A stretch of 64,000 nt of DNA from Macrostomum lignano. Taxonomy: Eukaryota. This document shows positions 1,965 to 50,054 of the stretch, in pieces. How positions within the stretch are numbered: position 1 is the stretch's first letter; each line of letters begins with the position of its first letter. The notes beneath the pieces were generated by a model. The model was not told the origin of the DNA. It did no database searches and saw nothing but the letters and a program-made list of their open reading frames with translations. The stretch lies in contig NIVC01001103.1 in assembly GCA_002269645.1 (NCBI GenBank), positions 62,001-126,000 of the forward strand, given 5' to 3'. The position numbers and the translations under genes are program-made.

Positions 1965-2255
1965 ATGTTAGAGATGCCGGAGCTGAAGCGCATTCTGCAC
2001 GAGGACGACGCGGAGTCGCTGATCGTCCAGCTCGAGCTGGCCAAGCCCCTCTCTCTGCAGCAGATTCTGCAGCTTGGTATCGAGCAGCTGGGTGATGACG
2101 CCGGCACTGCTGACTGCATCAAGTGCGGCAGGTCCGACTTCACGTCGTTCCTCATCGCTCACTCAACCCTGCTGGAAGTGGCCGCGTGCACACTCGCTCT
2201 CAACTGTGTCACTCTCCTCATCGACGAGTTGGAGGCCGCAGCGGAGTTTGTCGCT

Positions 2256-2290
<35 letters not shown>

Positions 2291-3881
2291 TCTTCATCGG
2301 GCAGTCGGAGAGTCAGTCGTGCCGCTGCACTGTCTCATTGTGAAGCTGTTCACTCTGAGAGGAGGCGGCGGCGGCGGCGGCGGCGGCGGCGATGCGGCAT
2401 TCGAGGACCGGGCGGTGAGATTCGTGCGCCAAGTGTCGGCTGCGCGGCCTCGCTTCTTCCGCGTGTGCGCAGAGAAGGAGGCGTTCGGCCACAATGCTCT
2501 CGAGCTGGCAGTCAGTCTGCAGCTGTTCTCACTGGCTGAGTGCATTCTCGAGTCGGGCAAGTACTGCGGCGAGGTCAGTCTCGTAGCGGGCGTTAAGGTG
2601 CAGCGAGTGGATCTGAGCGAGTACGACTTCGACACCGGGGAGTGATACAACAAGAGCCCCCTGAACATGTTGGCCTTCATGGCAATGAAGGAATTGTCGC
2701 ATCCTCTGAAAAGATTTCTGGAGCATCGCATTATTGCCGAAAGCACACGCAGAATTTCTAGTCGCATTAGACGCCCGATGCTCACCAGAGCAATCGTGCT
2801 CACCATCTACAAGATTATCATTTTGCTGTTTGCTCCAGCCAGCATCTACACCAGAGTGACTGTGACGCGCTTCAAAATCAGCGGGAACTCCAGCTCGTGT
2901 CCCCTGTTTGGAATTCATTTATTGTGGCAATCTATTTGTGAGCACGCGCTTGTTCAAGCTGTGATGAACGTCTCTCTCGTTGCATTCAATTTGGAGTGCT
3001 GCGTGATTCTTGTTTCAAGCGTAGCTCTGGCCAAATCTCTTACCGTTCAAAAGTCGTACACTGAAACACTGCTGGAATTTGTGTTCACCAGGAGCCAGAT
3101 TCCTATAAGAATCGGCATTTTGCTCCTCTCCATCATTATGGCGTACTTTTCAGTGAGAACTAGAACTGAGCCAACTTCGATGATCCCGCTGAACGAAACC
3201 CGACCGCATCAGCTTGTAGCTTTGGACTATGCTACAAGTATCATCTACTCCCTAACGGCACTAACCTTGGTTTACGATTGGATGCTGGTCATCGAGAAAA
3301 TGGTTCTGCTTTGGGATGTCATGGGGATCTTCGCGTTTTTTGTTGCAATCATTTTGGTCGTGATGTCGCTGTTTTGCTGGTTAATATCGCTTGTTGTGCC
3401 ATGCGACCCAGTGTTTCATCCCGAGATGTCAGCGGAGATTTCCTACACTCTTCTTACTTTCTATCTGCTGCTAAATAACGGAGGTTTGTCACGAGATTCG
3501 GTCAGAACACTGGGCGCTGTGTTCCTGTTGACTCACGCGCTCATTGTTCTTTTCTGCTTCAACTTCCTTATCGCGCTGCTGTCCCAGCGTCTGTCCGTGG
3601 CATCGGAAAACCTGCATCACCTCTGCACGGCATACCGAATGCACACGTACCATTTTGTCCAGATGGCTTTCAGGAACTTGCGGAATGCTTTTGGCCTAGA
3701 TAGGCGGTGTACATGTGCATGCATCGAAAAACAAAAAGACAATGAGTTCACGCCTTGGAGATTCTGCCTAATAACGGAAGCTAAATCGGATTTTCAAAGC
3801 GGCGATGCATTATCAGCGCACCGAGAAAACAGCAGCAAGGATGAATTACGTAGAAGTACTACGGGAAACCTCGTACTATAG
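1965..3881 (+). pseudogene. TRPV-like channel paralogue 1, intronless, with one in-frame TGA (2643-2645)
   Basis: ORFs 1938..2645 and 2667..3881 are in the same frame. Ankyrin-like GHNALELAV; VKVQRVDLSEYD..SPLNML resembles the TRPV pre-S1 YDLSxID..SVLE region; multiple TM helices, pore helix LLTFYLLLNNGG, S6 LFCFNFLIALLSQRL. The TGA aligns with CGA at 48879 in paralogue 3. Confidence 0.7.
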
Positions 3882-11833: not shown

Positions 11834-14800
11834 ATGCTCACAATTGGCTTCTATTGTTTAGCATCTCTGCCACTGCCTGCACATTACCAGCCGTGTGTCA
11901 GGTCTCTACACAGGCAATTATTATCAACCAGTGCCGCTGTCAAAGCTGCAATGCGAGTTCTAAATGTTGCTGAAAAGAACGATGCAGCCAAAAGCCTGGC
12001 CGCTATCATGTCCAACGGCCAGATGCGCCGCCGGGATGGCCAGTCGAGGTATAACAAAATCTACGAATTCCAGTGCAACCTGCTTGGCCAGCAGTGCCAG
12101 ATGACCATGACCTCGGTTAGTGGCCACTTAATGAACTATGACTTCACTCAGCAGCACAGAAAGTGGCTCAGCTGCACCCGTCGGCCTGTTTGATGCCCCC
12201 GTTGTTAAACAGATACAGCGGGACTACCAGCCAATCAGGGACACCCTGACCAGCTGCCAAGTCCGCTCAGCGGCTGGTCATCTGGACAGATTGCGATCGA
12301 GAGGGCGAAAATATCGCATGGAGATTGTCAACGTCTGCATGGCCTCGAATCCCAGTAATGGTCGTTCAGGCAATTCTTTGGGATTCAGAATGGGGATATG
12401 GATTCTCGTGCAGGATTCAGAATGGGGATCAGGATTCTCGTGCAGGATTCAGAATGGGATATGGATTCTCGTGAGGATTCAGAATGGGGATATGGATTCT
12501 CGTGCAGGATTCAGAAATGGGATATGGATTCTCGTGCAGGATTCAGAATGGGATATGGATTCTCGTGCAGGATTCAGAATGGGGATATGGATTCTCGTGC
12601 AGGATTCAGAATGGGGATCAGGATTCTCGTGCAGGATTCAGAATGGGGATCAGGATTCTCGTGCAGGATTCAGAATGGGGATCAGGATTCTCGNNNNNNN
12701 NNNNNNNNNNNNNNNNNNNNNNNNNNNNNNNNNNNNNNNNNNNNNNNNNNNNNNNNNNNNNNNNNNNNNNNNNNNNNNNNNNNNNNNNNNNNNNNNNNNN
12801 NNNNNNNNNNNNNNNNNNNNNNNNNNNNNNNNNNNNNNNNNNNNNNNNNNNNNNNNNNNNNNNNNNNNNNNNNNNNNNNNNNNNNNNNNNNNNNNNNNNN
12901 NNNNNNNNNNNNNNNNNNNNNNNNNNNNNNNNNNNNNNNNNNNNNNNNNNNNNNNNNNNNNNNNNNNNNNNNNNNNNNNNNNNNNNNNNNNNNNNNNNNN
13001 NNNNNNNNNNNNNNNNNNNNNNNNNNNNNNNNNNNNNNNNNNNNNNNNNNNNNNNNNNNNNNNNNNNNNNNNNNNNNNNNNNNNNNNNNNNNNNNNNNNN
13101 NNNNNNNNNNNNNNNNNNNNNNNNNNNNNNNNNNNNNNNNNNNNNNNNNNNNNNNNNNNNNNNNNNNNNNNNNNNNNNNNNNNNNNNNNNNNNNNNNNNN
13201 NNNNNNNNNNNNNNNNNNNNNNNNNNNNTAGTATTCTCAGTAGTTTCCATGATGAGATTCTTATAGTTTTCATGAGATTCTCGGTAGTTTCCAGGATGAG
13301 ATTCTTGTAGTTTCTATGATAACCTCTGTAGTTTCGCATGATGAGATTCTCATAGTTTTCATGATAAGATTTTGGTAGTTTCCATGATGAGATTTTGGTA
13401 GTTTCCTTGATAGATTTTGGTAGTTTCCATGATGAGATTCTCGCTAGTTTCCCATGATGAGATTCTCGCTAGTTTTCATGATGAGATTTTTGGTAGTTCC
13501 ATGATGAGATTTTGGTAAGTTTCCATGATGAGATTCTCGTAGTTTCCATGATGAGATTCTCGCTAGTTTTCATGATGAGATTTTTGGTAGTTTCCATGAT
13601 GAGATTTTGGTAGTTTCCATGATGAGATTCTCAAGTAGTTTTCATGATAAGATTTTTGGTAGTTTCCATGATGAGATTTTGGTAGTTTCCATGATGAGAT
13701 TCTCGGTAGTTTTCATGATAAGATTTTTGGTAGTTTCCATGATAACCTCTGTAGTTTCCATGATGAAATTTTTGGTAGTTTTCCATGATAATTTCTGTAG
13801 TTTCCATGATAATCTCGGTAGCTTCCGTGATGAGCTTTTTAGTAGTTTCCATGATTCACAATGTTATTTTGAGACTTGGGCGAAGAATGTCGATATTGAT
13901 ATTCAGCCAGATAATCTCAGAGCTCAGCATCTCAAAATGCGCCTGGCTGTCTCGCCTCCTACTTTCCGCAGGCTGTCGGCCAGATGTTTCTGGCCCACGT
14001 GCTCGAATCGCCCATAGCAACAGTAATTAGCGTCGAGTCCAAGCCCAAGAATCGATGGCGCCCGTGCGCGCTGGACACGGTGGAATTCGAGAAGCTGGCC
14101 TCCCGCAAACTGCGCATCAACGCCAAGGAGGCGATGCACATCGCCGAGCGCCTGTACACGCAGGGCTACATCTCCTATCCGCGCACGGAGACGAACATAT
14201 TCCCTAGGGATTTTAATTTGGCGCGGCCTAGTTCAGACTCAAACTGCGGACAATCGGTGGGCCCAGTTTGCCCAGCGAGTGGCCGAGCATGGGCCAAGCC
14301 CGCGGAATGGCAAGAAGTCTGATCAGGCCCATCCGCCTATTCACCCGCTGAAATGCGGTGACGGACTGGCTAATAATGAGGCCAAGGTGAGCCTGCGTTC
14401 TTGTTGTCAGCAACATGTGTTCTTCACTTTTTAAACCTGGAGACCTCGAAAGCCTATGGTATCTTTGGGACTGAGATAACTCCGGATTTAATGCCCCCTG
14501 AGATAATTATGGATTTAATGCCCCCTGAGATAATAATATGGATTTAATGCCCCCTAAGTTAATTCAGAATTTAATGACCCCAGAAATAATTATGGGTTTA
14601 ATGACCCCTGAGATAGTTATGGATTTAATGACCCCTGAAATAATTATGGATTTAATGACCCCCTGGAATAAATCTGGATTTAATGACCCCTTGAGGTAAT
14701 TATGGATTTAATGACCCAGATAATTATGGATTTTATGACCCCTAGGATAATTCTAGATTTAATGACCCCTGAGATAATTCTGGGTTTAATGACCCCCTGA

Positions 14801-17498: not shown

Positions 17499-17531
<33 letters not shown>

Positions 17532-17586
17532 AGCGGCTTTGCCAACAGTAGCTTTGGCAGCGGCAGCAGCAGAGGTGGCTTCAGCC

Positions 17587-17621
<35 letters not shown>

Positions 17622-21138: not shown

Positions 21139-22974
21139 ATGCCGGAGCTGAAGCGCATCCTGCACGAGGACGACGCGGAGTCGCTGATCGTCCAGCTCGA
21201 GCTGGCCAAGCCCCTCTCTCTGCAGCAGATTCTGCAGCTTGGTATCGAGCAGCTGGGTGAAGACGCCGGCACTGATGACTGCATCAAGTGCGGCAGGCCC
21301 GACTTCACGTCGTTCCTCATCGCTCACTCAACCCTGCTGGAAGTGGCCGCGTGCACACTCGCTCTCAACTGTGTCACTCTCCTCATCGACGAGTTGGAGG
21401 CCGCAGCGGAGTTTGTCGCTGGCGCCGACGCCGACGCCGACGCCGACGCTCTTCATCGGGCAGTCGGAGAGTCAGTCGTGCCGCTGCACTGTCTCATTGT
21501 GAAGCTGTTCACTCTGAGAGGAGGCGGCGGCGGCGGCGGCGGCGGCGATGCGGCATTCGAGGACCGGGCGGTGAGATTCGTGCACCAAGTGTCGGCTGCG
21601 CGGCCTCGCTTCTTCCGCGTGTGCGCAGAGAAGGAGGCGTTCGGCCACAATGCTCTCGAGCTGGCAGTCAGTCTGCAGCTGTTCTCACTGGCTGAGTGCA
21701 TTCTCGAGTCGGGCAAGTACTGCGGCGAGGTCAGTCTCGTAGCGGGCGTCAAGGTGCAGCGAGTGGATCTAAGCGAGTACGACTTCTTCTCGGGGGACAG
21801 ATACACGAAGCACCCACTGAGCATGCTGGCCACATCCGCAATGGAGGATACTCCAGATGCTTTGAAAAAGTTCATGGATCATGGCATTGTGAGCCAATGG
21901 TCGCAGAGACTCACCAACTCCATGCGGAGTACGATGCTTATACGAGCTCTCGTGCTGACCGTGTACAAGATCCTGCTTCTTTCTGTCGGCTCGTCGTGTG
22001 TTTACTCGGGCGTGACCGTGACCCGGATGCGGAGCGGCCAGGCGAACGGCAGCTGCCCGCTCTACCGGCTAAACCAGCGCTGGCACTCAAACTGCCAGCA
22101 GCCTTCTGCAAAGCTCGGCCTTGTGCTCCTCCTCATCTGCTACGTCGCTGAGAGCCTTCTGACCGTCTGCTCGAACTGCGTGTTCGCCTGCATGACACGA
22201 GGAGCCGTTTCGCGGTGTCGCGCCATCGTCCAGCACGCTTTGAGAAACAGCCAGATGCCTGTGGCTGTCGGTATCCTGCTTAACTCTGTCCTGACGCTAG
22301 TTCTCGCGATCGGCGCGGTTGAACACGCGTCTTCTCTGACCCTGGCCATCACCGATCGGGACGTCTACTTGAAGCTGCTGGACTACTCCATCAGCCTGCT
22401 GTACATTCTGACCATCTTAACAATTGTGTTCGACTGGATGCTGGTGGTTGAGAGCATCGCCCTGCTGTGGAAAGTGATGAGCACCTTTGCCTTTTTCTTG
22501 GCCATCATATTCAGCTTAATAGCCCTGTTTCTCTGGCTAATCGCCCTTATTGTGCCGTGCGAGCCCAGCTTCAATGTGAACGTGAACAGCAACTTGTTTA
22601 CGGAGGGCCTGCTCGTATTCTACCTGCTGATTAACAATGGCGGCTTGTCCAGTGAATCTATCAGAGCGCTCGGCATCGTCTACCTGGTCATGCACGCCCT
22701 CATTGTGCTGTTCTGCTTCAACTTTCTAATTGCCCTGCTGTCTGAGCGGCTGTCCAAGGCTGCTAGCAGCAGTCGCTACGTCTGTTTGGCCTATCGGCTG
22801 CACGTGCGGTTCATTGGGCTGATGGCGCCGGCTTATCTAATCCGCTGGTCACCTGGATCCAAGACTGTAGACCGCCTCTGCTGCTGCTGCTGCCGCTGCT
22901 TGAAGAGCTTTCTGGGGAAAATTGTCCCAGATTGTTGTTTCCTCTATCGATTGGCTGAGCCTATGACTAACTGA
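21139..22974 (+). CDS. TRPV-like channel paralogue 2, intronless, intact (611 aa)
   Basis: Same N-terminal cassette as paralogues 1 and 3; TM helices, pore LLVFYLLINNGGLS, S6 LFCFNFLIALLSERL, Cys-rich C-terminal tail. Confidence 0.75.
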   Translation: MPELKRILHEDDAESLIVQLELAKPLSLQQILQLGIEQLGEDAGTDDCIKCGRPDFTSFLIAHSTLLEVAACTLALNCVTLLIDELEAAAEFVAGADADADADALHRAVGESVVPLHCLIVKLFTLRGGGGGGGGGDAAFEDRAVRFVHQVSAARPRFFRVCAEKEAFGHNALELAVSLQLFSLAECILESGKYCGEVSLVAGVKVQRVDLSEYDFFSGDRYTKHPLSMLATSAMEDTPDALKKFMDHGIVSQWSQRLTNSMRSTMLIRALVLTVYKILLLSVGSSCVYSGVTVTRMRSGQANGSCPLYRLNQRWHSNCQQPSAKLGLVLLLICYVAESLLTVCSNCVFACMTRGAVSRCRAIVQHALRNSQMPVAVGILLNSVLTLVLAIGAVEHASSLTLAITDRDVYLKLLDYSISLLYILTILTIVFDWMLVVESIALLWKVMSTFAFFLAIIFSLIALFLWLIALIVPCEPSFNVNVNSNLFTEGLLVFYLLINNGGLSSESIRALGIVYLVMHALIVLFCFNFLIALLSERLSKAASSSRYVCLAYRLHVRFIGLMAPAYLIRWSPGSKTVDRLCCCCCRCLKSFLGKIVPDCCFLYRLAEPMTN

Positions 22975-35674: not shown

Positions 35675-38600
35675 AGACATTTGGTAGAGCATGTGGTGCG
35701 GCGGCACCGGCTGATAGTACTGGACTTGCATTGCAGTTACCGGGCTGTGTTGGTGAGATTCGGCTCAGTTGTGTTGTTGTTGTTGCTGCTGCTGCTTTGA
35801 CATGCGCAGCCTCGGCGCCGCTATTTATGAATGAGGCCGGCACAGCGGCCCGGGCGGGTGGGGAGCGGCCGGGGCGAGGTCAGGGGCGGGCCGGACAGCT
35901 GATTCACGGCGCTGGGCAACTGCTATTGGCTGCTGCCGCTGCTGCCGCTGCTGCTCAAAGGGGGTCTGGGTTAGAGGGAGCAGGCTAAGACAGGTAATGG
36001 GCGTCGGCGGAAGGGGCGGAGTGGGGGGCTGACGCGTGGCTGAGTACACTCAACATTTTCTGGGTAGGGGAAGGAGAGAGAGCTATCAACACTGCAGAAT
36101 GTTGGACTTGTGAGCAAAGAAGAGTAACGCAGACAGGCGGAGAGCGTAGAGCTTTCGCTTTCTTCTATCTAGTTTTGGTATCTGGCAACGCTTGACTAAC
36201 TAGCCATTGTTAGGCATTTGTGCCTGTTCTGTCTGACTGACTAACTGACTAATTCCCGCTGGGGCTGAATGAGGCAGTAAGGGCGGTCGGTCAAGGGCTC
36301 CCCCCAGTCTCTCTCACCTGGTTTGGCCGCGGCCGAGTCCGAGCTGGCCCGGCTGTGGGCCACTGTCGGCGGCTGCGGCGGTCGGGGTGGTCGGCGGGCG
36401 GAGAAAAACTCGACAATGTCGGCCGAGCGCCTGACGGGCTCTGGCAGTTCAACAAGCAACCTTGGAGGGTGGGAAGAGAAATGATAGGGCCGGGTGATGG
36501 CGATAAGGTAGCCGGGTGTTCCACATCTGAAAGGATTCCTAACACGCAGTCCCTGGTGCTTGTGAAACGGAAGGGAAGGCGGGCCCGGGACGTAGAGGGC
36601 TAACTAATAAATTCTAAGTGCTTATTTTCCTGCTTTTGTGTGTTTCCGACATCTGGATGACACTTATTCATGCACATAAAAATCTCCGACGGTCAATTAT
36701 CAATTTATTAGACCTGTTATTTATAAAGGTAGCTAAGTAGATTATATTCCTAAACTGTGGTCAACATAGCATTGTAATATAGCAAGTGCAAGAGGTCAAA
36801 GTGTAGGCACGGCAGGTAGGACAGAATCCAGTTGAGATACTATTTTTAGTAACAAAACTCTTCCCCCACCCGGGCAAGGAAGAGTCATGAGCAGTGGGGA
36901 GGGGACTATCCATATAGGGAACAGGGAGTGGGTATGGGCGGCAGAAAGTACCCGGCTTGTGCAGGGGCCCTCACCCCACCCCGGCAGATCAGTGCAGTCG
37001 TGCATTATTGAAACTATTACATTCTCTTCTAATCTTAACCCAGATAAGACTGGCATGCAAGAAATAATAATTGCAGAAATTATCTCTTCTAAGAAAGTTA
37101 CGAATGGAGACTTTTTTACTAAAAATAGTAACAAAACTGTATTAGAGATAACCAATATTGCCCAGACTTTTAAAAACTTAAAATACATGAAGAAATAAAA
37201 ATTTTCTAACAACAATAGAAAATAAAATAGGTTGAATAGCTGCTAGCACAGTCGGCAAAAGCCATCCGAAATAGAAATGGGTGGGAGTGACCCAAGCAAC
37301 AACATTCATACTGCAGGCACAGCGGGTGGGTCAATCACACAACACACGCACAGTTTGCTAATACCCACACTAGGGCAGCCTCCTCTGCCCTCGCACACAC
37401 ACACACACACCAACTCTGTATAGATAGATGGTCTGGGTCAGGTTCTGCAGGTTTTTGAGTCTGCACAATATGCAAAATAGCGCCTATTACTACAGAGCTA
37501 CCTGTTTACTTGAAGGCTCCAGAAAGGTGGGGGGGGGGCTTACGAGATGGGGCAGTGGCAGCCACAGGTTTAGCTGTTGGGCCCTAGTAGCAGCAGCAGC
37601 TCTCAATATCGACAGCAGCCTTGCGTATAGCGGAATAAACTGATGAGGCACACAGTTTACGTTGAGAAAGAAAGACGCCTGCCTAAAATACGCGAATTCC
37701 ATTCAGGTAAGAATTCGGCACACAGCCGGGGAGGCAGGGGGGGGGCAAGACCTCAATAATGAGACTTCTTCTTCTTTTTCTAGTTTAGTTGGCTCAGAAG
37801 AAGATCACAGGACTCAACTCCGTTGGCTGCGTGCCAAGTGCCCACTCCATAGTCAGCCGCCGCCTACACACTATACGAGGAATTCAAGGGGGTCACCCGT
37901 CCCCCCGTGACCCCGCGTGTTGACTTTGGCCAAGCAAGAAGCGATCCGGAAGCAGAAACAAACAGAGAACATGGCAAAGTAATTAGAAAAAGACAACTGA
38001 TGACTGTGGAACTGCCTAGCCTATTAACTAAACTTCTTAATCTCCCCCCAGATACAGAATTCGAACTATTCGAGTTGTTTATATAAGCGCAGAAATCTGA
38101 CTTGCTTTGAATAGAAATTCTTGATTTTTTGAGTGAGCAAATATTATGATTTCTGAATTCTGCTAACGGCTAACAGGCATTTATTAGGATGGCCGACAGT
38201 GATGACATGAAAAACTTCGAATGCTTTGCAAGTAAAACTAACTCATACTCGATCTTCTAAAGCTCAAAAAAATAATTCAAGGTTAACTTGCAGAACCCTA
38301 CTCAGCACCTAAAACACCGGTTGCAGAACCCTACTCAGCACCAAAGACACCAGTTGCAGAACCCTACTCAGCACCTAAAACACCGGTTGCAGAACCCTAC
38401 TCAGTACCCAAGATACCGGTTGCAGAACCCTACTCAGCACCAAAGACACCGGTTTCAGAACCCTACTCAGCACCCAAGATACCGGTTGCAGAACCCTACA
38501 GCACCTAAAACACCGGTTGCAGAACCCTACTCAGCACCTAAAACACCGGTTGCAGAACCCTACAGCACCAAAGACACCGGTTTCAGAACCCTACTCAGCA

Positions 38601-40719
38601 CCCAAGATACCGGTTGCAGAACCCTACAGCACCTAAAACACCGGTTGCAGAACCCTACTCAGCACCTAAAACACCGGTTGCAGAACCCTACAGCACCCAA
38701 GACACCGGTTGCAGAACCCTACAGCACCAAAGACACCGGTTGCAGAACCCTACTAAGCACCCAAGATACCGGTTGCAGAACCCTACAGCACCAAAGACAC
38801 CGGTTGCAGAACCCTACTCAGCACCCAAGATACCGGTTGCAGAACCCTACAGCACCTAAAACACCGGTTGCAGAACCCTACTCAGCACCTAAAACACCGG
38901 TTGCAGAACCCTACTCAGCACCTAAAACTCCGGTTGCAGAACCCTACTCAGCACCTAAAACACCGGTTGCAGAACCCTACTCAGTACCCAAGATACCGGT
39001 TGCAGAACCCTACTCAGCACCAAAGACACCGGTTTCAGAACCCTACTCAGCACCCAAGATACCGGTTGCAGAACCCTACAGCACCTAAAACACCGGTTGC
39101 AGAACCCTACTCAGCACCTAAAACACCGGTTGCAGAACCCTACAGCACCCAAGACACCGGTTGCAGAACCCTACAGCACCAAAGACACCGGTTGCAGAAC
39201 CCTACTCAGCACCCAAGATACCGGTTGCAGAACCCTACAGCACCTAAAACACCGGTTGCAGAACCCTACTCAGCACCTAAAACACCGGTTGCAGAACCCT
39301 ACAGCACCCAAGACACCGGTTGCAGAACCCTACAGCACCAAAGACACCGGTTGCAGAACCCTACTCAGCACCCAAGATACCGGTTGCAGAACCCTACAGC
39401 ACCAAAGACACCGGTTGCAGAACCCTACTCAGCACCCAAGATACCGGTTGCAGAACCCTACAGCACCTAAAACACCGGTTGCAGAACCCTACTTAGCACC
39501 TAAAACACCGGTTGCAGAACCCTACTCAGCACCTAAAACTCCGGTTGCAGAACCCTACAGCACCAAAGACACCGGTTGCAGAACCCTACTCAGCACCCAA
39601 GATACCGGTTGCAGAACCCTACAGCACCAAAGACACCGGTTGCAGAACCCTACTTAGCACCTAGAACACCGGTTGCAGAACCCTACTCAGCACCAAAAAC
39701 ACCGGTTGCAGAACCCTACAGCACCTAAAACACCGGTTGCAGAACCCTACTCAGCACCTAGAACACCGGTTGCAGAACCCTAATCAGCACCAAAAACACC
39801 GGTTGCAAAACCCTACTCAGCACCTAAAACATGGGCTTGACCTGCGATTGTCATTCCGCAACTCACCGAAGCAACATCTGCACGGCACTGGTGACGGACT
39901 CAGCGCTGAGCCGGGACGCCAGCTTGCCTCTGTTGAGCAGGCCGTCCAGCAGGGGAATTCGGGCAGCCTGCTGAGTCCGCAGATGCGGCTGCACCTGTGA
40001 TTGAGTTTTCACAGTTGGAAACAAGCACGACAGGATGATGACATCGTAACGGTATAGATTTTAGCTTATTCTTGAGCATTTTCTCAATCCAAAATTCCGT
40101 CTAAAAGTCAATGAGAAAATCTTCCTCTTTGAGTTAACTTCCCGTTGGGAACTGAATCCCAGCTGAAATCTTGGGCAATCCGACCCGTGCGTGGGCCGAG
40201 TCCTAATTGAAAACCTGCCAAGTACCTGCCAGTCTGTCCAGTCCTTATCAGATTTTGCTGGATTATAAACCAAAACCTCCTTCAACTACTGTCATTCCAT
40301 GACTGCGATGGATGAACAGTTTAAGTCCGTGTTATAGTTTTTCAGCATTTACTTTTCTCGCAAGAGTCGCCCGATTGCAAAGTAATCGAGCCAACTACAA
40401 TTGTACTTCTATACCCAAAGTCATAAATTATATTTTTCGCCAATAGAGATAATGTTTTTTTATAAACTCAACGGCGAAAATAAGGCAAAACGTGCAGTAA
40501 AAATAAACAGAGAGTCGGATTCAAATGCACCCAGAGGCAGTGAGGAGCGAATATATCTATTTAGCACCTAAATATCATCTCGGGGGCCGCATCTTACGCT
40601 CAGAAACTCTCGCAAACTGACAGAATATTGCGGGTGAGAAGAGGGCGGCCACCTCCCTCCCTCTCCTCTGGCGACAATTGAGTTAGTTCGCATTGAGCAT
40701 TGTTGCTCAATCTGTGCCA

Positions 40720-40759: not shown

Positions 40760-43700
40760 CGCTCGATCTTTCGAAGAGCCGACCCTGATGAAAGAAAAGA
40801 CCCAGCGGCTGGTCCGCAGCTTCTTCATTCTTTTGATGGCGGCTTGAAATTAACTCAGCCCAACCCCCACCTGCAAAGCGCTGACAGGTGCGACAAACTG
40901 GATTTCATACAGCGAAAAATAGATTTGACAGTTTGCCCAGGCCTGGACAGACTGGGGCAGGCGGCGTGCAGCTTCTCAGATGAAGCTATTCATTTATTCA
41001 TTCATTCACACGCCGCATGCTGAGAATACTTTAATTTTTGACCCACTGACAGGCACGCGCTATAATAGTTAGAATGCTGAAATTCTCAGAGTTGCTATGC
41101 TCGTATTGTAAAAAAAATTGGACACTTCATCAGACAGACTAACTGTGCGTGAAATTAGTGATCTGGTTTAATTAAACCAGCAATACGGCTTGTTGTCTAT
41201 GGCTTACAGCAATTACAGCACTTTTCAGACCCCTTAGAGAAGTATACTACATAATAACCTCTAATTTCGTCTTCTATGGAAAAGAAAGTCCGAGGATGCA
41301 CTTTATCAGGCCGAGGCGAAGCCGGGGTCTGAGAATAGCGTCCGAGGGCTTTCTACCATAGAACACGAAACTAGTGAAACTAGAACACGACGGGAGCGGA
41401 GTGCGTTGGCGTTGCCAAGCTTGTGTATATGGTTTTGGAGGTAGACAATGATTGTCTTTAACAGTATTGACAGTATTGTCTTTTTCAACAGAAAAGAAAG
41501 GCCTCGTTAAACGATACATTATATAGTTTTAGTAAAGAAGGTTAATAAGAAAGACTATAGAATTAAAAGCAAATATTTAAATAAAACTCTGCTTCTCTTT
41601 CTTCTGCTCAGTGAGGAAGAGGAAAGGGAAGGCGCGGGTGCCGCTCGGCTGTGTGTGTGGAATTCTGCCGGCATCAACTGACACGCAATAAAACACGTCA
41701 GGTAAGGCAATACAAGGTTGGCAGTGCAATTTTACCTTAGCGTAGAGGGCCAGCAGGTCCGACAGGCTTCTGACAATTTCAGAACGGACACTGCCGGGCC
41801 AGAGAGTCGCCTGCAAGTGCAAGTGTGCGGAAGCTGAGGCTGAGTCGGGAGTTGCATGGCATAATTGAGGCGCAGGCAGAGAGGGAGAGGCTGGGGGTGA
41901 AACGGGGCCGCGGGAGACCTGATCACGTGAATGAGGGAAGGGGTTGCTTTTTACCAAACGGAGCGGGAACGCTCTTTTAGTGGTCAGTCCGTCTACCTGC
42001 CTTCCTCTCTGCACCTGCCGTAGCTATTGATTCAACACAGCCAACAGCCAGCTAAAACATGTAATTGACCCCCCCCCATAAAATGATTTGTTATTCCCAA
42101 TTGACTTGACAAGTAGCCCCATGCTATTTCTTACTTTCTACTGGCAGTAGCTGAGGAAGATATTTTCAGCAAATAAATTGAATGAAAATTTCTTATTGGC
42201 CCACCACTTACGTGGATGCAGAACGGCGCGTCGAGGCCGACAGAGCCGACGGGAGCGGAGTGCGTCGGCGTCGCCAGGCTGGCCTGACGCAGGCACAGAC
42301 CTGCGGGTTGTTGGGAGTGTCAACTACTTGAGCGCTCAGCTACTTTTTCGGTGGTACGCAGAGGGGTCCAATGGAGCCACACCAAAGGGACTGACACTGA
42401 AGTGACTGACACTGAAGTGACTGACACTGAAGTGACTGACACCGAAGGGACTGACACCGAAGTGACTGACACTGAAGTGACTGACACCGAAGGGACTGAC
42501 ACTGAAGTGACTGACACTGAAGTGACTGACACTGAAGTGACTGACACTGAAGTGACTGACACTGAAGTGACTGACACCGAAGAGACTGACACTGAAGTGA
42601 CTGACACCGAAGGGACTGAAACTGAAGTGACTGACACCGAAGGGACTGACACTGAAGTGACTGATACCGAAGGGACTGACACTGAAGTGACTGACACTGA
42701 AGTGACTGACACTGAAGTGACTGACACTGAAGTGACTGACACTGAAGTGACTGACACCGAAGAGACTGACACTGAAGTGACTGACACTGAAGTGACTGAC
42801 ACTGAAGTGACTGACACTGAAGTGACTGACACTGAAGTGACTGACACCGAAGAGACTGACACTGAAGTGACTGACACCGAAGGGACTGAAACTGAAGTGA
42901 CTGACACCGAAGGGACTGACACTGAAGTGACTGATACCGAAGGGACTGACACTGAAGTGACTGACACTGAAGTGACTGACACTGAAGTGACTGACACTGA
43001 AGTGACTGACACTGAAGTGACTGACACCGAAGAGACTGACACTGAAGTGACTGACACCGAAGGGACTGAAACTGAAGTGACTGACACCGAAGGGACTGAC
43101 ACTGAAGTGACTGATACCGAAGGGACTGACACTGAAGTGACTGACACTGAAGTGACTGACACTGAAGTGACTGACACTGAAGTGACTGACACTGAAGTGA
43201 CTGACACTGAAGTGACTGACACTGAAGTGACTGACACTGAAGTGACTGACACTGAAGGGACTGACACTGAAGTGACTGACACCGAAGGGATTGACACTGA
43301 AGTGACTGACACCGAAGGGACTGACACTGAAGTGACTGACACTGAAGTGACTGACACTGAAGTGACTGACACTGAAGTGACTGACGCTGAAGTGACTGAC
43401 GCTGAAGTGACTGACACCGAAGGGACTGACACTGAAGTGACTGACACCGAAGGGACTGACACTGAAGTGACTGACACTGAAGTGACTGACACCGAAGGGA
43501 CTGACACTGAAGGGACTGACACTGAAGTGACTGACACCGAAGTGACTGACACTGAAGTGACTGACACTGAAGCGACTGACACTGAAGTGACTGACACTGA
43601 AGTGACTGACACTGAAGTGACTGACACTGAAGTGACTGACACTGAAGGGACTGACACCGAAGGGACTGACACTGAAGTGACTGACACTGAAGTGACTGAC

Positions 43701-45457
43701 ACTGAAGTGACTGACACTGAAGTGACTGACACTGAAGTGACTGACACTGAAGTGACTGACACTGAAGGGACTGACACCGAAGGGACTGACACTGAAGTGA
43801 CTGACACTGAAGCAAAGCATTGGCCTGGCACTCCTCACCCGGATAAGCAGCAGTTCCAGTCCGTTGCTTCTTTGGTCTGCTGCCCGGCGGTCTTCTAGCT
43901 TCGACATCGAGTTCGGTGGCATCCGACAGTCGTCTCTGCCGCCAGTGCTGCATCAGAGCCGTTATCATCGGCGGCAGAGGCGGAGCCGTGCCGAGCCAAG
44001 CAGATTCATCGGCAGCGGCGGTTGTGACGGCGGTGGCAGATCGGGAGCGCAGTCGATGACCAGCCACCGTTGGCGTTGTCGACGCCGCAGCGGCCGCGCC
44101 AGACTGTCGAAGTGTACAGTCTGAACAGCAGACGGCTTCGGGGTTCGAATCCTGTTTGAAAATTAAACCGAAGTTTGACTTGATTTTGAGCTATAGAAAT
44201 ATTTTATTTGGTGACTACTGTGAGTAGTTGAAATCTACAATATTGCCAGTTTGACTAAAACTTTACCGACAATAAATCAAATAAATCAAATAAATCAAAC
44301 TTGCTGTACGACGGGAGAAATTTGCGCGATGGGAGGAATTTAACTTGATTATAGCTGCCTGCCAATAAAGGACCCTGTGCAAGTAGTGGTCTGGTTTCTA
44401 AAAAGTCTACTAACAAGTAGCAAGACAAGAATATAAGGCTAGCCAATCTTTCATAGTTTGTGTTAAGGGTTGGACACTGATAGTTAAATAAATAGAACCT
44501 ATAGAACGGGTGTGTGCCCAGGGCCGGGCCTAGATCTAAGCGACTAAGACTATCAGAAAAAGAGCGAGGACCCAGAAACCGTTTCTCCTCTATTGCTAGA
44601 AGTCCGATAATAATAAAAATAATTGATTACACCTGCCCCAATGGACAGACGTACAACCGACAGCTCAGCCGCAGCTATGGGGGGGGGGTCGCCACACACG
44701 CCCTCAGTTACCCCAGCTAATGCTGGCACCCATTTTACAGCTGGGTGAACTGAAGCAATGCAGAGTTAAGGTGACTTGCTCAAGGACACAAATTTTTCCT
44801 GAGGGATCAGGAATCGAACCCCCGACCTATCAGTCGTGCGTCTGACGCTGTAACCCCCAGAAACCGGAGCAGCTGTTAAATAGAGGGACGAACCCTAGCA
44901 AGAGCCAGCCGGCTGGCCAGGGCCCGCTGCACCGGCAGCATTCGCAGTCGGCTGGCGAACGGCAGCGCCGGCTGTCGCAGGGCCAGCGCGCCAACCAGGC
45001 AAGCGTGACGCAGGAGGCCACCGTCATTACCACCGGATGCATCGCCTGCGGCGTTAGTGGCGCGCTGAAGATCCAGCCGGGCGAGCCAGTCGGCCAGCAG
45101 GCGGCCGCAGTCTGCGTTGTCGGGCCGCACCAGAGCCAGGGCCAGCGTCAGGCGGCACAGCGCGGCATCGACGACGGCGCCGCCGCCGCTGCCACCCGCC
45201 TCGGGCTCGGTCAATCGGAGTAGCTCGGCTGGCGAGTTGACGCGAGCTTCGGCTTCGCGCAATTCAATGGTGCCGGCGCCGGCATCGGCGGCAGCTGCGG
45301 ACCAGGTGGCTAAAAACCGGAGCTCGAGAGGTGCACAATTGAGCAGCAGCGAGCTGAGCAGTTCGATGCGCTCGTGCGGCTCCAGGCGGCTGCTGAACCA
45401 ATTCAGAACAGAGTCGGGGGTCGGGTCGCTGGTGTCGTTGTTGTGACTGTTAGACAT
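34598..45457 (-). CDS. ZCCHC14: ZCCHC14/ZCCHC2-like protein (N-terminal Smaug-like domain, PX-like domain, Pro/Gln-rich region, RNA-binding SAM)
   Basis: Exon 1 NWFSSRLEPHERIELLSSLLLNCAPLELRFLAT matches the ZCCHC14 WF...R.EFL..LL..C.PLELRFL motif. Phase-consistent GT-AG exons at 44120-43839, 42300-42212, 41918-41736, 39994-39867 and 36460-36318 build a PX-like domain (LWPGSVRSEIVRS...LVELPEPVRRSADIVEFFS). SAM WLKTHRMHKY...TQGAIKK lies at ~35110-34930. The 3' exon structure is uncertain. Confidence 0.72.
38288..39826. repeat. 31/33-bp minisatellite (intronic)
   Basis: CCGGTTGCAGAACCCTAC(TC)AGCACCTAAAACA units. Confidence 0.95.
40723..40753. repeat. (GA)n microsatellite
   Basis: About 15 GA units. 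Confidence 0.9.
42389..43811. repeat. 15-bp minisatellite, ~95 copies (intronic)
   Basis: GACTGACACTGAAGT units; variant cassettes recur at 42577, 42847 and 43027. Confidence 0.95.
44678..44855 (-). mobile_element. tRNA-derived CORE-like SINE, second copy
   Basis: Reverse complement of 15871-16043 (..CAGCTGGGTGAACTGAAGCAATGCAGAGTTAAG..GCTCAAGGACAC..GGAATCGAACCCCCGACC). Confidence 0.7.
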
Positions 45458-47996
45458 TTCAGCTAAAACTGGACTCGCAAAGACTGAGCGACTGAGTTCG
45501 ACGTTGGCTAGTTTAGGACTCAGAATTCAAATTGGCTCCCCTGGCTGCAGCGGACGACAATGGTGGTGGGGGTCGGGGCGTCGCCGCGCGCTCTACCCCA
45601 AACAGAGGCCTCCTGTAGTGGCGACTCGTTAAGGGGCCTGAAAGTATAAATTTTAGCGATAATGCTACAAAATCTGCTGACTAAGTTTATATCAGAAGCA
45701 GCAAAAAGACTGTGCTAACATGATGATTTCCACATCTGAAGATCAATTCAAAGTGAATAAAAGTAAAACAATATTTACAGGACCTCCAGCAGAAAATTTC
45801 AAAGATATCTATTGAAATGCTATATCAATTAAAAAAGTGCAAAATGTTGGGAAAAGATATAAACAAAAGCTGAAAATCAGTAGTTAAAACTCTAGCTATA
45901 GGTTTTTTAAAGAAAAGCTTGAAAAATAATTCTAGACAATAGTTATAATTTAATATACAACTGCAACATTTGAACTAATTTTAAAATCAGCTTTTTTAGG
46001 TATTATCAATTAAATACTTTTCAATTTAAGTAGTTCTAAAATAGTATGCTTAAAGTAATAGTTTTGAAAACCTTAGTGATAACACTTACAAAGTAAGGAA
46101 GTAAATCACAGCAATTTTTCTGGTGCAAGCATAGCTATTTTGTGATATGCTTTAAAATTACAAAGAAACTATAAACTGTACACTCTTCATATAAAAAACA
46201 TAAGTAAACCTAAGTATAGATGTTAAATAATATAATAAGATGTGTGTAAACATGTATGCATACAATGCCATACACATATGTGTACACGATTCTAATAATT
46301 GTGTATGCTTTTCTAAAAAAGTATGGACTACAAGAAATATTTTAAATACGAAAAACAGTCCTACTACATAAAAACTCATCATCTACAATCATCAAGCAAT
46401 AAAATTTATAACTAAGTTTACCAAAATTTATTTCCCAAACTGGGCAAAAATTTTGGGATTTATTAATGAAATAATCTTGATAAAGTTTTAGAAAAAATTT
46501 ATTTATTTTTTCATAAGATGAGCCACCAAATTATTATGTTTTACCTATTTCAAAGCATCTACAATAATATTTGACCAGACTACAAGCGACCTTTCTTCGA
46601 ACGACTGCTTTTAAAGTATTAATATGTTTTACCGCGCATAATAATTAACCTCTTAAAAATAAATTAAAACAAGAAAAACATTTAAAAACAGCATTTCTTT
46701 CGCTTATTATATGATGGAAACTTTTGATTACAAGTTGCGTTGAAAACTTTGTTTTACTGCGTAACTTTTTTGTTTTTTAAACTTTGTTTGTGGCTACAAT
46801 TATTATATACTCTCTCTCTTATATGGGCCTTTTCATATTGCTTGTTCTGGTTCTAGAACCAGATCTAATTTGTAAAGTATATCTTTTTCTCTCCTTAACT
46901 AGAGGACTAGAGGGATGTACGTGCTTTAAAGTTGTAATTATTGTATTGCAATAGCCAAGAAGAAAAGTTATACTGCTTTTTTCTCGGAAGATCCGAACCG
47001 ATTCTGGTTCTGGAATCGGTAGTGTGAAAACCCTATATATATCGAAGATGAATGGCAACAAAATGTTAGTTTTGTTTTTTTATGTAGGAGACTTTTTTCT
47101 CGCTTTTACTCTTTTGCTGTATCACTCACTTCCTAGTGTTTTGAATTAACGTACCCGCTTAAAAATCTCTAGCGTTCAGAATTACTAAAATCGATATAGT
47201 AGCATTTAGCGGCTTCCTTGCATACATGTATACATCTCGCTTCTATATGTACATGTACTGTAAATAAGTATAGTCTTCTTGATTCATTACTCTGATTTAA
47301 AAGAATTTTTCGTCTGCAAATATGAATTTATCAGAAAAAAATCGTGCACATGTAGTATCTACAAATAATTTATGCAACAACAAACGGCGCTATGCATGTA
47401 CTAAGAACATTGAACAGAAAGTACTACACATTTTTGCAGGAAATGAAATCGTGCTCGCCCTAAGACTGACTGTGATTACTGGGCAAAGTGTAAAACGAAA
47501 AGAAAATAACCTATTAATTAGGTTCTTTAAGTACAGCTGTAATTTAGAAATGTGATAAACTTCAACTAAGTGTTTTTTTCACAAGAAAAAAAGTTAGCTG
47601 CATGCCATTAAATAACAGTCCAATTAAGTTCGCGAGTCCGAGACACAGACATTGCATCGTAATTTACGGCTTGGTAACTAATAGCGGATCGATAGCTCCG
47701 CGAAGCAAATAAAAAGACCATGTTTGCAGTATCATGATGTCGCCCCTAATTATTTGCTCAACTTCAGCACACTATACCATCCAATTTCCAGGTACTGGAA
47801 CACTGTCAATAGATTGCGAAAAACTTCGAAGTCCGACTGACACGTCTTTGCAGTCTGGATCGATTGAAACATCACCGAGAACGGTGACAGGCGTTCTCAG
47901 TCAGTCTCACTATGAGAAAAAATCCACTTCCGGCCCAATCTTCTTGGAGCCCAATTATTCTTATCCAGAAAAGTATAAATGGTATAGTAAAATTGG

Positions 47997-50054
47997 TTGC
48001 TAGGGGAAGAATCGCGGGGAAAAACGCAGGAATTTACACACCGCACACGGATCCCTTGTGTCAGGAGGATGAAAGTTGCACCTCAAATTCTTCAAACGGT
48101 AAGCCAAAGTATTCTCTGGTATAAAGCCATTGGCGAACATATGGAAGCAGAAAAATTTGCAGTACACTTACAAACAATTCAGACATTCGATTCCACACTA
48201 ATTGATATGCACGACCTGAAGCGCATCCTGCACGAGGACGACGCGGAGTCGTTGATCGTCCAGCTCGAGCTGGCCAAGCCCCTCTCTCTGCAGCAGATTC
48301 TGCAGCTTGGTATCGAGCAGCTGGGTGATGACGCCAGCACTGCTGACTGCATCAAGTGCGGCAGGTCCGACTTCACGTCGTTCCTCATCGCTCACTCAAC
48401 CCTGCTGGAAGTGGCCGCGTGCACACTCGCTCTCAACTGTGTCACTCTCCTCATCGACGAGTTGGAGGCCGCAGCGGAGTTTGTCGCTGACGCCGACGCT
48501 GACGCCGACGCCGACGCTCTTCATCGGGCAGTCGGAGATTCAGTCGTGCCGCTGCACTGTCTCATTGTGAAGCTGTTCACACTGGGAGGAGGCGGCGGCT
48601 GCGGCGGCGGCGGCGGCGGCGGCGGCGATGCGGCATTCGAGGACCGGGCGGTGAGATTCGTGCGCCAAGTGTCGGCTGCGCGGCCTCGCTTCTTCCGCGT
48701 GTGCGCAGAGAAGGAGGCGTTCGGCCACAATGCTCTCGAGCTGGCAGTCAGTCTGCAGCTGTTCTCACTGGCTGAGTGCATTCTCGAGTCGGGCAAGTAC
48801 TGCGGCGAGGTCAGTCTCGTAGCGGGCGTCAAGGTGCAGCGAGTGGATCTGAGCGAGTACGACTTCGACACCGGGGAGCGATACAACAAGAGCCCCCTGA
48901 ACATGCTGGCAGTCACAGCAATGAGTGATCTTTCAATGCCATTAAAAAAGTTTCTCGACAATGACATTATCAAAAGATGGTCCTGCGCAACAACCGGGCG
49001 GCTAAAGAGATATATGTGTTTGAGGGCACTGATATGCACTTTATACAAGCTAGTCCTACTATTCTTTGGTTCGGCGTGCGTTTACTCGTCAATCTCTGTA
49101 AAAATCCTGGCTAACTACATGCCTGACCGCCCAGTTAACTCAAGCAGTTGCCCGCTGTTCTCGATGCACCACAATATGTCGGAATTTTGCAGCATATTTG
49201 CAGTGCGCTGCATTGTCAACGTTCTGGCATGTGGATACATCATTGAGTGCATCGTGTCGCTGGCCGTTCACCTGATCTATGTCAGGGTAGCTCAGGGCAA
49301 CAGCTCTTACTTGGCGGCGTTGGCACGCGATTTTCGATGCACCAGCCAAATTCCACTGAGAGTCTGCGCATTGAGTCTCATGGTCTGCATCGGTTTGGTT
49401 CCCGACAGGATCCAGATAGTTTCATTGTTTGACAGGGGCGCGGGACTCCGAATTCTGGATTACGCAACTGGCACGCTCTACATTATAACAATAATGACAA
49501 TAGTTTACGACTGGCTGCTGGTTATAAAAACTTTGGCTCTGCTTTGGAATATTGTTGGCATATTTTTCTTCTTTATGGCGATCATCTTCTTGGTTATCGG
49601 CCTGTTCTGCTGGCTCATCACGCTCATCGTGCCGTGCGAAATTGCCTTCGACCGCGAGATGTTCGCCAATCCGTCTTACGGCCTGTTGAACTTCTACCTG
49701 ATGGTCAGCCACGGCGGCCTGTCCCGAGAATCCGCGCAGTCTCTGGGCATCTTCTACCTGGTGACGCACGCCCTCATCGCACTGTTCTGCTTCAATTTTC
49801 TAGTCGCCTTAATGTCGGAGCGATTGTCAACCGCGTCGCGAGATCTGCCTTACATCTGCACCTCCTACAAGCTGTACATTTACCACGTCTACATGCTGTG
49901 CATTGCCTTCGTGAGCCGGCTTGTGCAGTGTAAGAGAAAAATAACAAATGCGAAAGACAACAGTCCGCTTCAGTTCTGCAGAATTTTGGAGCCACAACTC
50001 AGATTCACTGACTTAAAGGGAGCAGGACAATCCACTGCCAGCTATTTAGGTTAG
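47997..50054 (+). CDS. TRPV-like channel paralogue 3, intronless, intact (ATG candidates 48069 and 48207)
   Basis: Shared N-terminal cassette, TM helices, pore LLNFYLMVSHGGLS, S6 LFCFNFLVALMSERL. Confidence 0.75.
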   Translation: MLGEESRGKTQEFTHRTRIPCVRRMKVAPQILQTVSQSILWYKAIGEHMEAEKFAVHLQTIQTFDSTLIDMHDLKRILHEDDAESLIVQLELAKPLSLQQILQLGIEQLGDDASTADCIKCGRSDFTSFLIAHSTLLEVAACTLALNCVTLLIDELEAAAEFVADADADADADALHRAVGDSVVPLHCLIVKLFTLGGGGGCGGGGGGGGDAAFEDRAVRFVRQVSAARPRFFRVCAEKEAFGHNALELAVSLQLFSLAECILESGKYCGEVSLVAGVKVQRVDLSEYDFDTGERYNKSPLNMLAVTAMSDLSMPLKKFLDNDIIKRWSCATTGRLKRYMCLRALICTLYKLVLLFFGSACVYSSISVKILANYMPDRPVNSSSCPLFSMHHNMSEFCSIFAVRCIVNVLACGYIIECIVSLAVHLIYVRVAQGNSSYLAALARDFRCTSQIPLRVCALSLMVCIGLVPDRIQIVSLFDRGAGLRILDYATGTLYIITIMTIVYDWLLVIKTLALLWNIVGIFFFFMAIIFLVIGLFCWLITLIVPCEIAFDREMFANPSYGLLNFYLMVSHGGLSRESAQSLGIFYLVTHALIALFCFNFLVALMSERLSTASRDLPYICTSYKLYIYHVYMLCIAFVSRLVQCKRKITNAKDNSPLQFCRILEPQLRFTDLKGAGQSTASYLG

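What the first reader, a model, noticed from the sequence alone, without database searches (positions are those of the whole stretch)
1965..50054. Chimeric channel family: near-identical N-terminal cassette on three highly diverged pore modules
Seen: about 0.65-0.7 kb (1974-~2665, 21139-~21790, 48216-~48905) is almost nucleotide-identical among three paralogues. Identity stops abruptly at the start codon region upstream and near YDF(D/F) downstream, after which the TM domains are only moderately similar as proteins. Inference: recurrent gene conversion or module swapping homogenises the cytoplasmic ankyrin-like/assembly domain while the sensor and pore part diversifies, as in immune receptor families.
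Basis: partly seen in the sequence, partly recalled or inferred. Interest (0 to 1): 0.7.

Follow-up and report, generated by a model that had tools for sequence, protein, structure and literature searches.

The report
Shared N-terminus on diverged flatworm TRP channels
Three neighbouring, very old and very different TRPV-like ion-channel genes of the flatworm Macrostomum lignano carry an almost letter-identical first 650-700 bases, most likely because the gene copies keep overwriting each other's N-terminal part (gene conversion); a clean example of a known process in an undescribed gene family.

Summary
Three single-ORF paralogues on the + strand (c1 1974-3881, c2 21139-22974, c3 48207-50054) differ at 1.4-1.9% of bases over their first 640-690 nt. 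They differ at about 48.5% everywhere else (max chi-square above 400). Synonymous divergence is 0.025-0.038 in the cassette and saturated in the rest. Both flanks of the cassette are unrelated between copies, so this is neither a recent duplication nor a crossover.

The best explanation is interlocus gene conversion confined to the N-terminal coding part (confidence 0.72). Whether it is recurrent or was a single burst is not settled.

The C-terminal module is a six-helix TRP-type channel closest to TRPV (profile against PDB E=1e-5; Foldseek top hits all TRPV). The cassette is not detectably ankyrin and has no homologue anywhere.

The assembly gap (12694-13228) lies between two different minisatellite arrays in intergenic DNA and touches no paralogue. 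It does mean that c1 is linked to c2 and c3 only by scaffolding.

Also found: an in-frame TGA in c1 (2643-2645), a truncated copy of c3 without the cassette (62008-63049), and a pore remnant on the minus strand (55079-55262).

This is a new member of a known kind, of moderate interest.

The parts
1974..2674 (+). c1 N-terminal cassette (ATG 1974; near-identical to c2 up to 2629 and to c3 up to 2674)
2643..2645 (+). in-frame TGA in c1, where c3 has CGA and c2 has AGA (Arg). It lies inside the tract shared with c3. The frame stays open for 411 more codons.
2675..3881 (+). c1 diverged pre-S1, six-helix TRPV-like module and tail
12694..13228 (.). assembly gap between two unlike minisatellite arrays (12381-12693, 32-nt unit; 13240-13855, 23/47-nt unit); intergenic
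21139..21785 (+). c2 N-terminal cassette
21786..22974 (+). c2 diverged TRPV-like module (whole gene is an intact 611-aa ORF)
48207..48910 (+). c3 N-terminal cassette (homologous ATG 48207; identity starts at 48216; the ORF is also open upstream to 47997)
48911..50054 (+). c3 diverged TRPV-like module
62008..63049 (+). c4: copy of the c3 locus (96-97% identical; the duplicated block runs on to the window end at 64000). The stretch 48060-49313, which holds the start codon, the cassette and S1-S2, is missing and replaced by 12 nt of filler (62297-62308).
55079..55262 (-). c5: degraded remnant of the pore-S6 region of a further family member

Best explanation
The window is from the flatworm Macrostomum lignano. 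It holds a cluster of lineage-specific, single-exon genes for six-helix TRP-type channels closest to TRPV. The paralogues are old: synonymous sites are saturated and S1-S3 is only 26-31% identical as protein. Their first 215-235 codons, however, have been homogenised by non-crossover ectopic recombination (interlocus gene conversion) between the copies. The last event dates to about dS 0.03. The tract starts at the start codon because that is where paralogue homology begins; the upstream DNA is unrelated. It ends near YDF, where the downstream sequence is too diverged to support heteroduplex formation. Shown: the identity step, its limits, the unrelated flanks and the TRPV-like nature of the C-terminal module. 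Inferred: the mechanism, that conversion has been ongoing rather than a single event, and any functional reason for it, such as a shared cytoplasmic domain for assembly or a common partner.
For: Identity steps from 98-100% to 25-65% within about 30-60 nt at both ends. There are 1.4-1.9% differences inside against 48.5% outside, chi-square 409-437. dS is 0.025-0.038 inside against 1.9 or more outside. pS per 25 codons is 0-0.17, then 0.5, then 0.5-1.0 and mostly 0.65-0.85. The 2-3 kb upstream and 3 kb downstream flanks share nothing by blastn or tblastx except one small dispersed repeat, so the pattern has two boundaries, which rules out a recent whole-gene duplication or a single crossover. 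The reading frame runs straight through the 3' boundary in c2 and c3, so that boundary is not an exon edge. Tract ends differ between copies, which needs at least two events. Each copy has private substitutions and private microsatellite lengths, so they are separate loci. Cassette GC is 63.5% and GC3 0.78, against GC3 0.57-0.73 in the rest and 33-45% GC in the flanks, as GC-biased conversion would give. The copies have the same orientation within 50 kb. Channel assignment: six hydrophobic helices, TRPV4/TRPV3 at E 1e-5, all top Foldseek hits TRPV, and the S6 motif N-x-L-I-A of the group-I TRP fingerprint (PMC9242649). Organism: ORF 16194-17783 is 100% identical to M. lignano topoisomerase A0A1I8GFT8.
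Against: There are no reads, so a polishing or assembly contribution cannot be excluded. The M. lignano reference is known to have chimeric scaffolds and wrongly expanded or collapsed variants (PMC10733133). No orthologous loci from other species were available, so the classical test (cassette tree by species, pore tree by orthology) was not run. The three cassettes are roughly equidistant, which does not prove recurrence. The GC1 excess shows that part of the GC enrichment comes from amino-acid composition. c1 is joined to the others only across the gap.
Confidence: 0.72

Rival explanations
1. One-off domain replacement (module swapping): a single N-terminal segment was recently copied onto unrelated or non-homologous N-termini of the other genes by a non-homologous or microhomology-mediated route such as template switching. 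It would not be homology-driven conversion between ancestrally homologous N-termini.
For: The three cassettes are about equally distant, star-like. The cassette has no detectable homologue outside this window, not even in the three distant relatives of the pore module, which are fragments. The identity step is very abrupt.
Against: It needs at least two independent, exactly in-frame replacements at the same protein position. No target-site duplications, terminal repeats or filler were seen in the aligned junction sequences. The 3' ends differ between copies while all remain colinear with the paralogue alignment, as homology-guided tracts do.
Confidence: 0.13
2. Assembly or polishing artefact: the cassette is truly similar but less so, or is present at fewer loci. 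Consensus polishing or gap filling with multi-mapping reads would then have copied one version into three places.
For: The scaffold contains a gap. The M. lignano reference assembly has 36% of its length in chimeric scaffolds and mis-expanded or collapsed variants (PMC10733133). Cassette divergence (1.4-1.9%) is of the order of the divergence between subgenomes (1.9-2.4%, same paper).
Against: Each copy has private SNPs spread along the cassette and its own microsatellite lengths. The frame is preserved across all junctions. The boundaries differ per copy. c2, c3 and c4 lie on gap-free sequence. Polishing can erase a few percent of difference but cannot create identity from about 50% divergence.
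Confidence: 0.08
3. There was no sequence exchange: the cassette is conserved at the nucleotide level by selection, for example on an overlapping RNA element or antisense gene, since an old duplication.
For: Long antisense ORFs overlap the cassette (2294-2806 and 48521-49048 on the minus strand). Such ORFs are expected in GC-rich sequence.
Against: About 97% identity at four-fold sites against 30-47% in the same genes would need constraint on essentially every base. Yet microsatellite lengths and amino acids do vary within the cassette. There are no Rfam matches in the window.
Confidence: 0.03

Closest known systems
Regionally restricted gene conversion in tandem gene families, e.g. the variable exons of clustered protocadherins (from my own knowledge: Noonan et al. 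2004; conversion in protocadherin clusters is treated in PMC1852091 and PMC2764143; general reviews PMC3966226 and PMC3924837, listed but not read)
   Same: Tandem paralogues in the same orientation. One part of the coding sequence is kept near-identical, synonymous sites included, while the part that confers specificity stays diverged. The tract limits are sharp.
   Different: Here the family is an ion channel, the homogenised part is the cytoplasmic N-terminus, the contrast is extreme (dS 0.03 against saturation), and only three intact-length copies are visible. There is no shared constant exon or splicing.
TRPV channels (TRPV1-6, OSM-9/OCR, Nanchung/Inactive; the canonical M. lignano TRPV reported in PMC5196486)
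   Same: Six transmembrane helices with a pore loop. S5-pore-S6 aligns to TRPV4/TRPV3 (E 1e-5). The S6 motif N-x-L-I-A is present. A long helix follows S6 where the TRP helix sits. The fold search returns TRPV1/2/3 first.
   Different: No Pfam ion-channel or TRP hit. No detectable ankyrin repeats. No tryptophan at the TRP-helix position. In the profile alignment the acidic selectivity-filter residue of TRPV (GMGD) is replaced (NNGG or SHGG). The genes are intronless and only 611-635 aa. Only three distant fragmentary relatives turned up among 1.84 billion representative proteins.
Concerted evolution of duplicated genes by gene conversion with escape through divergence (theory reviewed in PMC3924837)
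   Same: Conversion persists only where identity is still high, and regions past a divergence threshold evolve independently. This predicts a stable, sharp limit like the one seen here.
   Different: The theory is usually applied to whole duplicates. Here one half of the gene has escaped completely and the other half not at all.

Membership tests
TRP channel, group I, TRPV-like | Six transmembrane helices with a re-entrant pore loop between S5 and S6 | tested here: met
   Hydropathy gives six segments in all three proteins. The AF2 model of the C-terminal module shows the matching helices (pLDDT 63.7).
TRP channel, group I, TRPV-like | Significant sequence similarity to known TRP channels | tested here: met
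   A profile of the four pore modules plus three distant hits gives 16 PDB matches, all TRPV4 or TRPV3, best E 1.2e-5, over S5-pore-S6. Single sequences and the paralogue-only profile find nothing.
TRP channel, group I, TRPV-like | Match to a curated family model (Pfam Ion_trans / TRP-type domains) | tested here: not met
   No Pfam family at E<=1 for c2, c3 or the c1 pore module.
TRP channel, group I, TRPV-like | S6 fingerprint N-L-I-A (PMC9242649) | tested here: met
   FNFLIAL / FNFLVAL is found in all copies and in the distant hits.
TRP channel, group I, TRPV-like | Conserved Trp of the TRP helix after S6 (PMC9242649) | tested here: not met
   There is no W within about 30 residues after S6 in c1, c2 or c3. 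The aligned position holds C or T.
TRP channel, group I, TRPV-like | N-terminal ankyrin repeat domain (TRPV, TRPA, TRPC, TRPN) | tested here: not met
   No Pfam Ank. BLASTP against the window's own ankyrin protein gives E>2. An ANK HMM built here scores 0.4 bits or less. Structure could not decide: the N-terminus of the AF2 model has pLDDT about 30.
TRP channel, group I, TRPV-like | TRP-channel fold | tested here: inconclusive
   Of the top 50 Foldseek PDB hits, 43 are TRPV1/2/3 and the other seven are also TRP channels (TRPC, TRPM4, algal TRP1), with probability 0.96-1.00 and 250-420 aligned columns. But E is about 0.01, TM-score 0.45-0.47, and the model has only moderate confidence.
TRP channel, group I, TRPV-like | Cation channel activity | not testable with these tools
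   Needs electrophysiology.
Interlocus gene conversion / concerted evolution | Tract of near-identity that includes synonymous sites, within otherwise diverged paralogues | tested here: met
   dS 0.025-0.038 against 1.9 or more; four-fold sites about 3% against 53-70% different.
Interlocus gene conversion / concerted evolution | Both sides of the tract diverged (not a duplication end or a crossover product) | tested here: met
   Upstream and downstream flanks are unrelated. The limits are mapped.
Interlocus gene conversion / concerted evolution | Tree conflict: cassette groups by species, rest by orthology | not testable with these tools
   No other Macrostomum genome is reachable. There are no homologues of the cassette in the protein collections.
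Interlocus gene conversion / concerted evolution | GC enrichment of the converted tract | tested here: inconclusive
   GC3 is 0.78 against 0.57-0.73, and GC 63.5% against 47-55%, but GC1 is also raised, so amino-acid composition contributes.
Interlocus gene conversion / concerted evolution | Copies are physically real and separate (read support) | not testable with these tools
   No reads. Indirect support comes from private variants in each copy.

The most novel reading that the evidence does not exclude
The identical N-terminal domain is kept identical by selection acting through conversion. It would serve as a common cytoplasmic assembly or partner-binding module that lets diversified TRPV-like sensor/pore subunits co-assemble or plug into one signalling complex. 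That would be a 'constant region plus variable region' design, like clustered protocadherins, but achieved by gene conversion instead of splicing, in a previously undescribed ankyrin-less TRPV-like subfamily of flatworms.
Probability: 0.15. Interest if true: 0.65.

Novelty: new member of a known kind. Interest (0 to 1): 0.42.

Why it matters
This is an unusually clean natural example of domain-restricted concerted evolution. One half of a gene sits at dS about 0.03 and the other half at saturation, with limits sharp to a few dozen bases inside a continuous reading frame. That is useful for studying how conversion tracts are bounded and how paralogues escape conversion. It also uncovers a TRPV-like channel family in a genetically tractable flatworm. 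The searched protein collections hold no full-length member, although they do hold the UniProt M. lignano TOP3A protein encoded in the same window. The family has no Pfam match. If the shared N-terminus turns out to be an assembly or docking module, the locus would be a simple system for asking how sensory channel repertoires diversify while keeping common wiring.

Tried and rejected
- The repeat finder on the whole window was swamped by minisatellites and gave nothing on the paralogues. It was replaced by self-BLAST.
- A GENECONV-style test on runs of agreeing variable sites (first lines) was uninformative, because all three copies are identical in the tract and it holds almost no variable sites. 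The max chi-square test was used instead.
- An off-by-one start for c1 gave nonsense values and was corrected.
- Pfam on the full proteins and on the cassettes found nothing. phmmer and the paralogue-only profile against PDB found nothing.
- The word-indexed protein search with c2 found nothing. Exact-protein contig look-up for c2 found nothing.
- AF2 on full-length c2 with only the paralogues as alignment failed (pLDDT 38.8) and was not used for fold search.
- The contig of the one distant relative that could be traced is a 1.3-kb metagenome fragment with no context.
- No tRNA or Rfam families were found in the window.
- I considered that the 5' limit is a splice or trans-splice acceptor. c2 has CAG|ATG and c1 has AG|ATG, and M. 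lignano trans-splices about 30% of its genes with an SL ending in ATG (PMC8629364). c3 has no AG at that place, and without RNA data this stays open. It is not needed to explain the limit.
- A dS gradient beyond the 3' limit, which would indicate older and longer tracts, was looked for. The step is abrupt within one 25-codon window, so there is no support for it.
Full report
**What the window is.** It has 64,000 bases, 47% GC and one run of 535 N. The ORF at 16194-17783 is 100% identical to the UniRef entry for a DNA topoisomerase (TOP3A-type, GRF zinc fingers) of Macrostomum lignano. The window therefore comes from this free-living flatworm. Much of the non-genic DNA is minisatellite, and many long ORFs listed are simply open frames through these arrays or through the N run.

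**The gap.** The N run at 12694-13228 is flanked on the left by a 32-nt minisatellite (12381-12693) and on the right by a different 23/47-nt minisatellite (13240-13855). It lies 8.8 kb past the stop of the first paralogue and 7.9 kb before the start of the second. No paralogue, cassette or junction is touched, and no frame needs to be carried across it. It does leave one thing open: whether c1 really lies next to c2-c4. That join is scaffolding only, and the M. lignano reference is reported to have many chimeric scaffolds (PMC10733133).

**The observation.** There are three + strand ORFs:
- c1 at 1974-3881
- c2 at 21139-22974 (611 aa, intact)
- c3 at 48207-50054 (the frame is also open upstream to 47997)

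Self-BLAST gives 92-95.5% identity, gaps included, over 727-766 nt at their 5' ends. Only 65-68% identity is found in about 350 nt of the pore region, and nothing elsewhere. In a three-way alignment the 60-nt identity is 25-47% upstream of the ATG and 98-100% through the cassette. Dips occur only at a (GCCGAC)n and a (GGC)n run that differ in length. Identity is 25-65% afterwards.

Max chi-square places the limits as follows, with chi-square 409-437:

| Pair | Tract limits | Differences inside | Differences outside |
|---|---|---|---|
| c1/c2 | 1974-2629 / 21139-21785 | 9/646 | 538/1109 |
| c1/c3 | 1983-2674 / 48216-48910 | 11/682 | 523/1073 |
| c2/c3 | 21148-21785 / 48216-48865 | 12/637 | 543/1118 |

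Other measures agree:
- dS is 0.025-0.038 in the cassette. In the rest it is 1.9 for c2/c3 and not computable (pS above 0.75) for the other two pairs. dN in the rest is about 0.6.
- Four-fold sites differ at about 3% in the cassette against 53-70% in the rest.
- Protein identity is 95-98% in the cassette, 26-31% in S1-S3, 51-58% in S4-S6 and 21-30% in the tail.

**What the genes are.** Neither Pfam nor single-sequence PDB searches recognise them. A profile search of 1.84 billion representative proteins found only three weak hits (E about 1e-6). All three are short fragments that match the S3-S6 part. The one that could be traced sits on a 1.3-kb metagenome contig.

Adding those three to the four pore modules gave a profile that hits TRPV4 and TRPV3 structures at E 1e-5 over S5, pore helix and S6. 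Hydropathy shows six helices. An AF2 model of the C-terminal module (pLDDT 63.7) retrieves only TRP channels from the PDB. TRPV1 comes first, with probability 1.0, about 310-320 aligned columns, E about 0.01 and TM-score 0.45-0.47.

The S6 motif FNFLIAL carries the N-L-I-A part of the group-I TRP fingerprint (PMC9242649). Other expected features are absent:
- The fingerprint tryptophan of the TRP helix is missing.
- In the profile alignment the acidic filter residue of TRPV is replaced by glycine in all window copies, whereas the distant hits keep Asp. That alignment has low confidence.

I conclude that this is a divergent, lineage-specific TRPV-like family. It is separate from the canonical TRPV that M. 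lignano also has (PMC5196486).

**The cassette.** It spans about 220 aa, is predicted helical at low confidence and has no homologue. It shows no ankyrin signal by three tests. 'Ankyrin-like' is therefore unsupported, though a degenerate helical repeat is not excluded.

**How the pattern arose.** Identity at synonymous sites rules out protein-level constraint. Unrelated DNA on both sides rules out a young duplication or a single unequal crossover. The 3' limit lies inside a continuous ORF, so it is not an exon edge.

The copies keep private substitutions (about 3, 6 and 8) and private microsatellite lengths. The tract ends differ: c1 and c3 share about 45-90 nt more at the 3' side than either shares with c2, and c3 departs in codons 2-3. 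This is what non-crossover ectopic recombination between paralogues produces. Tracts can form only where homology is still high, that is from the first codon, with unalignable non-coding DNA upstream, to the point where the pore module has diverged too far.

The raised GC and GC3 of the cassette fits GC-biased conversion but is partly compositional. The step in pS is abrupt. I therefore see no trace of older, longer tracts, and 'recurrent' remains an inference from the need for long-term homology plus the differing ends.

Cassette divergence (1.4-1.9%) is of the same order as the reported divergence between M. lignano subgenomes (1.9-2.4%, PMC10733133). The last homogenisation is thus about as recent as the genome duplication. 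This is an inference.

**Further members.**
- c1 has an in-frame TGA at 2643-2645, where c3 has CGA. It lies inside the tract shared with c3, and 411 open codons follow it. It is a very recent null allele, a base error, or a polymorphism.
- c4 (62008-63049, with the duplicated block continuing to the window end) is a 96-97% copy of the c3 locus. In it, 48060-49313 (start, cassette, S1-S2) is replaced by 12 nt of filler. It differs from c3 by 6 synonymous and 5 non-synonymous changes in 741 nt, and by 2.5-3.5% in non-coding DNA. That level matches subgenome divergence, so c4 could be either a true tandem duplicate with a deletion or a homeologous variant placed in tandem by the assembler.
- c5 (55079-55262, minus strand) is a decayed pore-S6 remnant.

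**Rivals.**
- One-off non-homologous module replacement (0.13) is disfavoured. It needs repeated exact in-frame joins, and no transposon hallmarks were seen at the aligned junctions.
- An assembly or polishing artefact (0.08) cannot create identity from 50% divergence, and private variants argue against it. Only reads can close this.
- Nucleotide-level selection (0.03) is implausible.

**Verdict.** The gene-conversion reading is the best explanation (0.72) and the channel call is supported. The ankyrin and immune-receptor parts are not supported. This is a neat new member of a known kind of process, in an undescribed TRPV-like family, and of moderate interest.

Noticed in passing
window 16194-17783 (+): This long ORF has GRF and Top1-type zinc ribbons and is 100% identical to M. 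lignano DNA topoisomerase A0A1I8GFT8 over 49% of the query. It identifies the source organism and is probably the C-terminal exon of TOP3A.
   Followed up: yes
window 50908-52116 (+); start repeated at about 63885-64000: A stand-alone ankyrin-repeat ORF (9 or more repeats; Pfam Ank E 6e-66) lies 850 nt downstream of c3. Its start is included in the c3/c4 duplicated block. It has no similarity to the cassette.
   Followed up: partly
window 52728-54437 (+): A 569-aa ORF has a weak Mab-21 C-terminal (HhH/H2TH-like) domain hit (E 1.4e-5). It is possibly a cGAS/Mab21-like gene.
   Followed up: no
window 2643-2645: c1 has an in-frame TGA (CGA in c3, AGA in c2) within the converted tract. If conversion is ongoing, this null could be repaired from, or copied into, the other copies.
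   Followed up: partly
window 22600-22640, 49690-49730, 3470-3510 (pore loop): In the profile alignment to TRPV4 the selectivity-filter GMGD corresponds to NNGG (c1, c2) or SHGG (c3, c4), so the acidic residue is missing. The distant metagenomic relatives keep Asp (NFSD/NFTD). This may mean altered ion selectivity. The alignment has low confidence.
   Followed up: partly
window 211-345 and 19480-19624: A small dispersed element (about 80% identity, partly in inverted orientation) lies about 1.6 kb upstream of both c1 and c2. It is the only similarity between the flanks of any two copies. It could be a MITE-like repeat or a shared regulatory piece.
   Followed up: no
window 15871-16043 (+) and 44680-44854 (-): A 173-nt inverted pair at 89% identity, 29 kb apart, of unknown nature.
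   Followed up: no
window 4670-61810 (many): Very dense minisatellites are present, for example 25800-28385 (32 nt x 80), 42385-43812 (15 nt x 95), 38288-39831 (33 nt x 48) and 32428-33451 (20 nt x 51). They create many spurious long ORFs on both strands.
   Followed up: partly
window 21130-21141 and 1965-1976: The start codons of c2 and c1 are directly preceded by AG (CAG|ATG and AG|ATG). M. lignano trans-splices about 30% of its genes with a leader ending in ATG (PMC8629364). The 5' limit of the cassette may coincide with a trans-splice acceptor, but c3 lacks the AG.
   Followed up: partly
window 55440-55530 (-): The stretch contains GGATCGAACC-type sequence reminiscent of a tRNA T-arm, next to the c5 remnant. 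ARAGORN and Rfam call nothing, so it is possibly a SINE or tRNA-derived fragment.
   Followed up: partly
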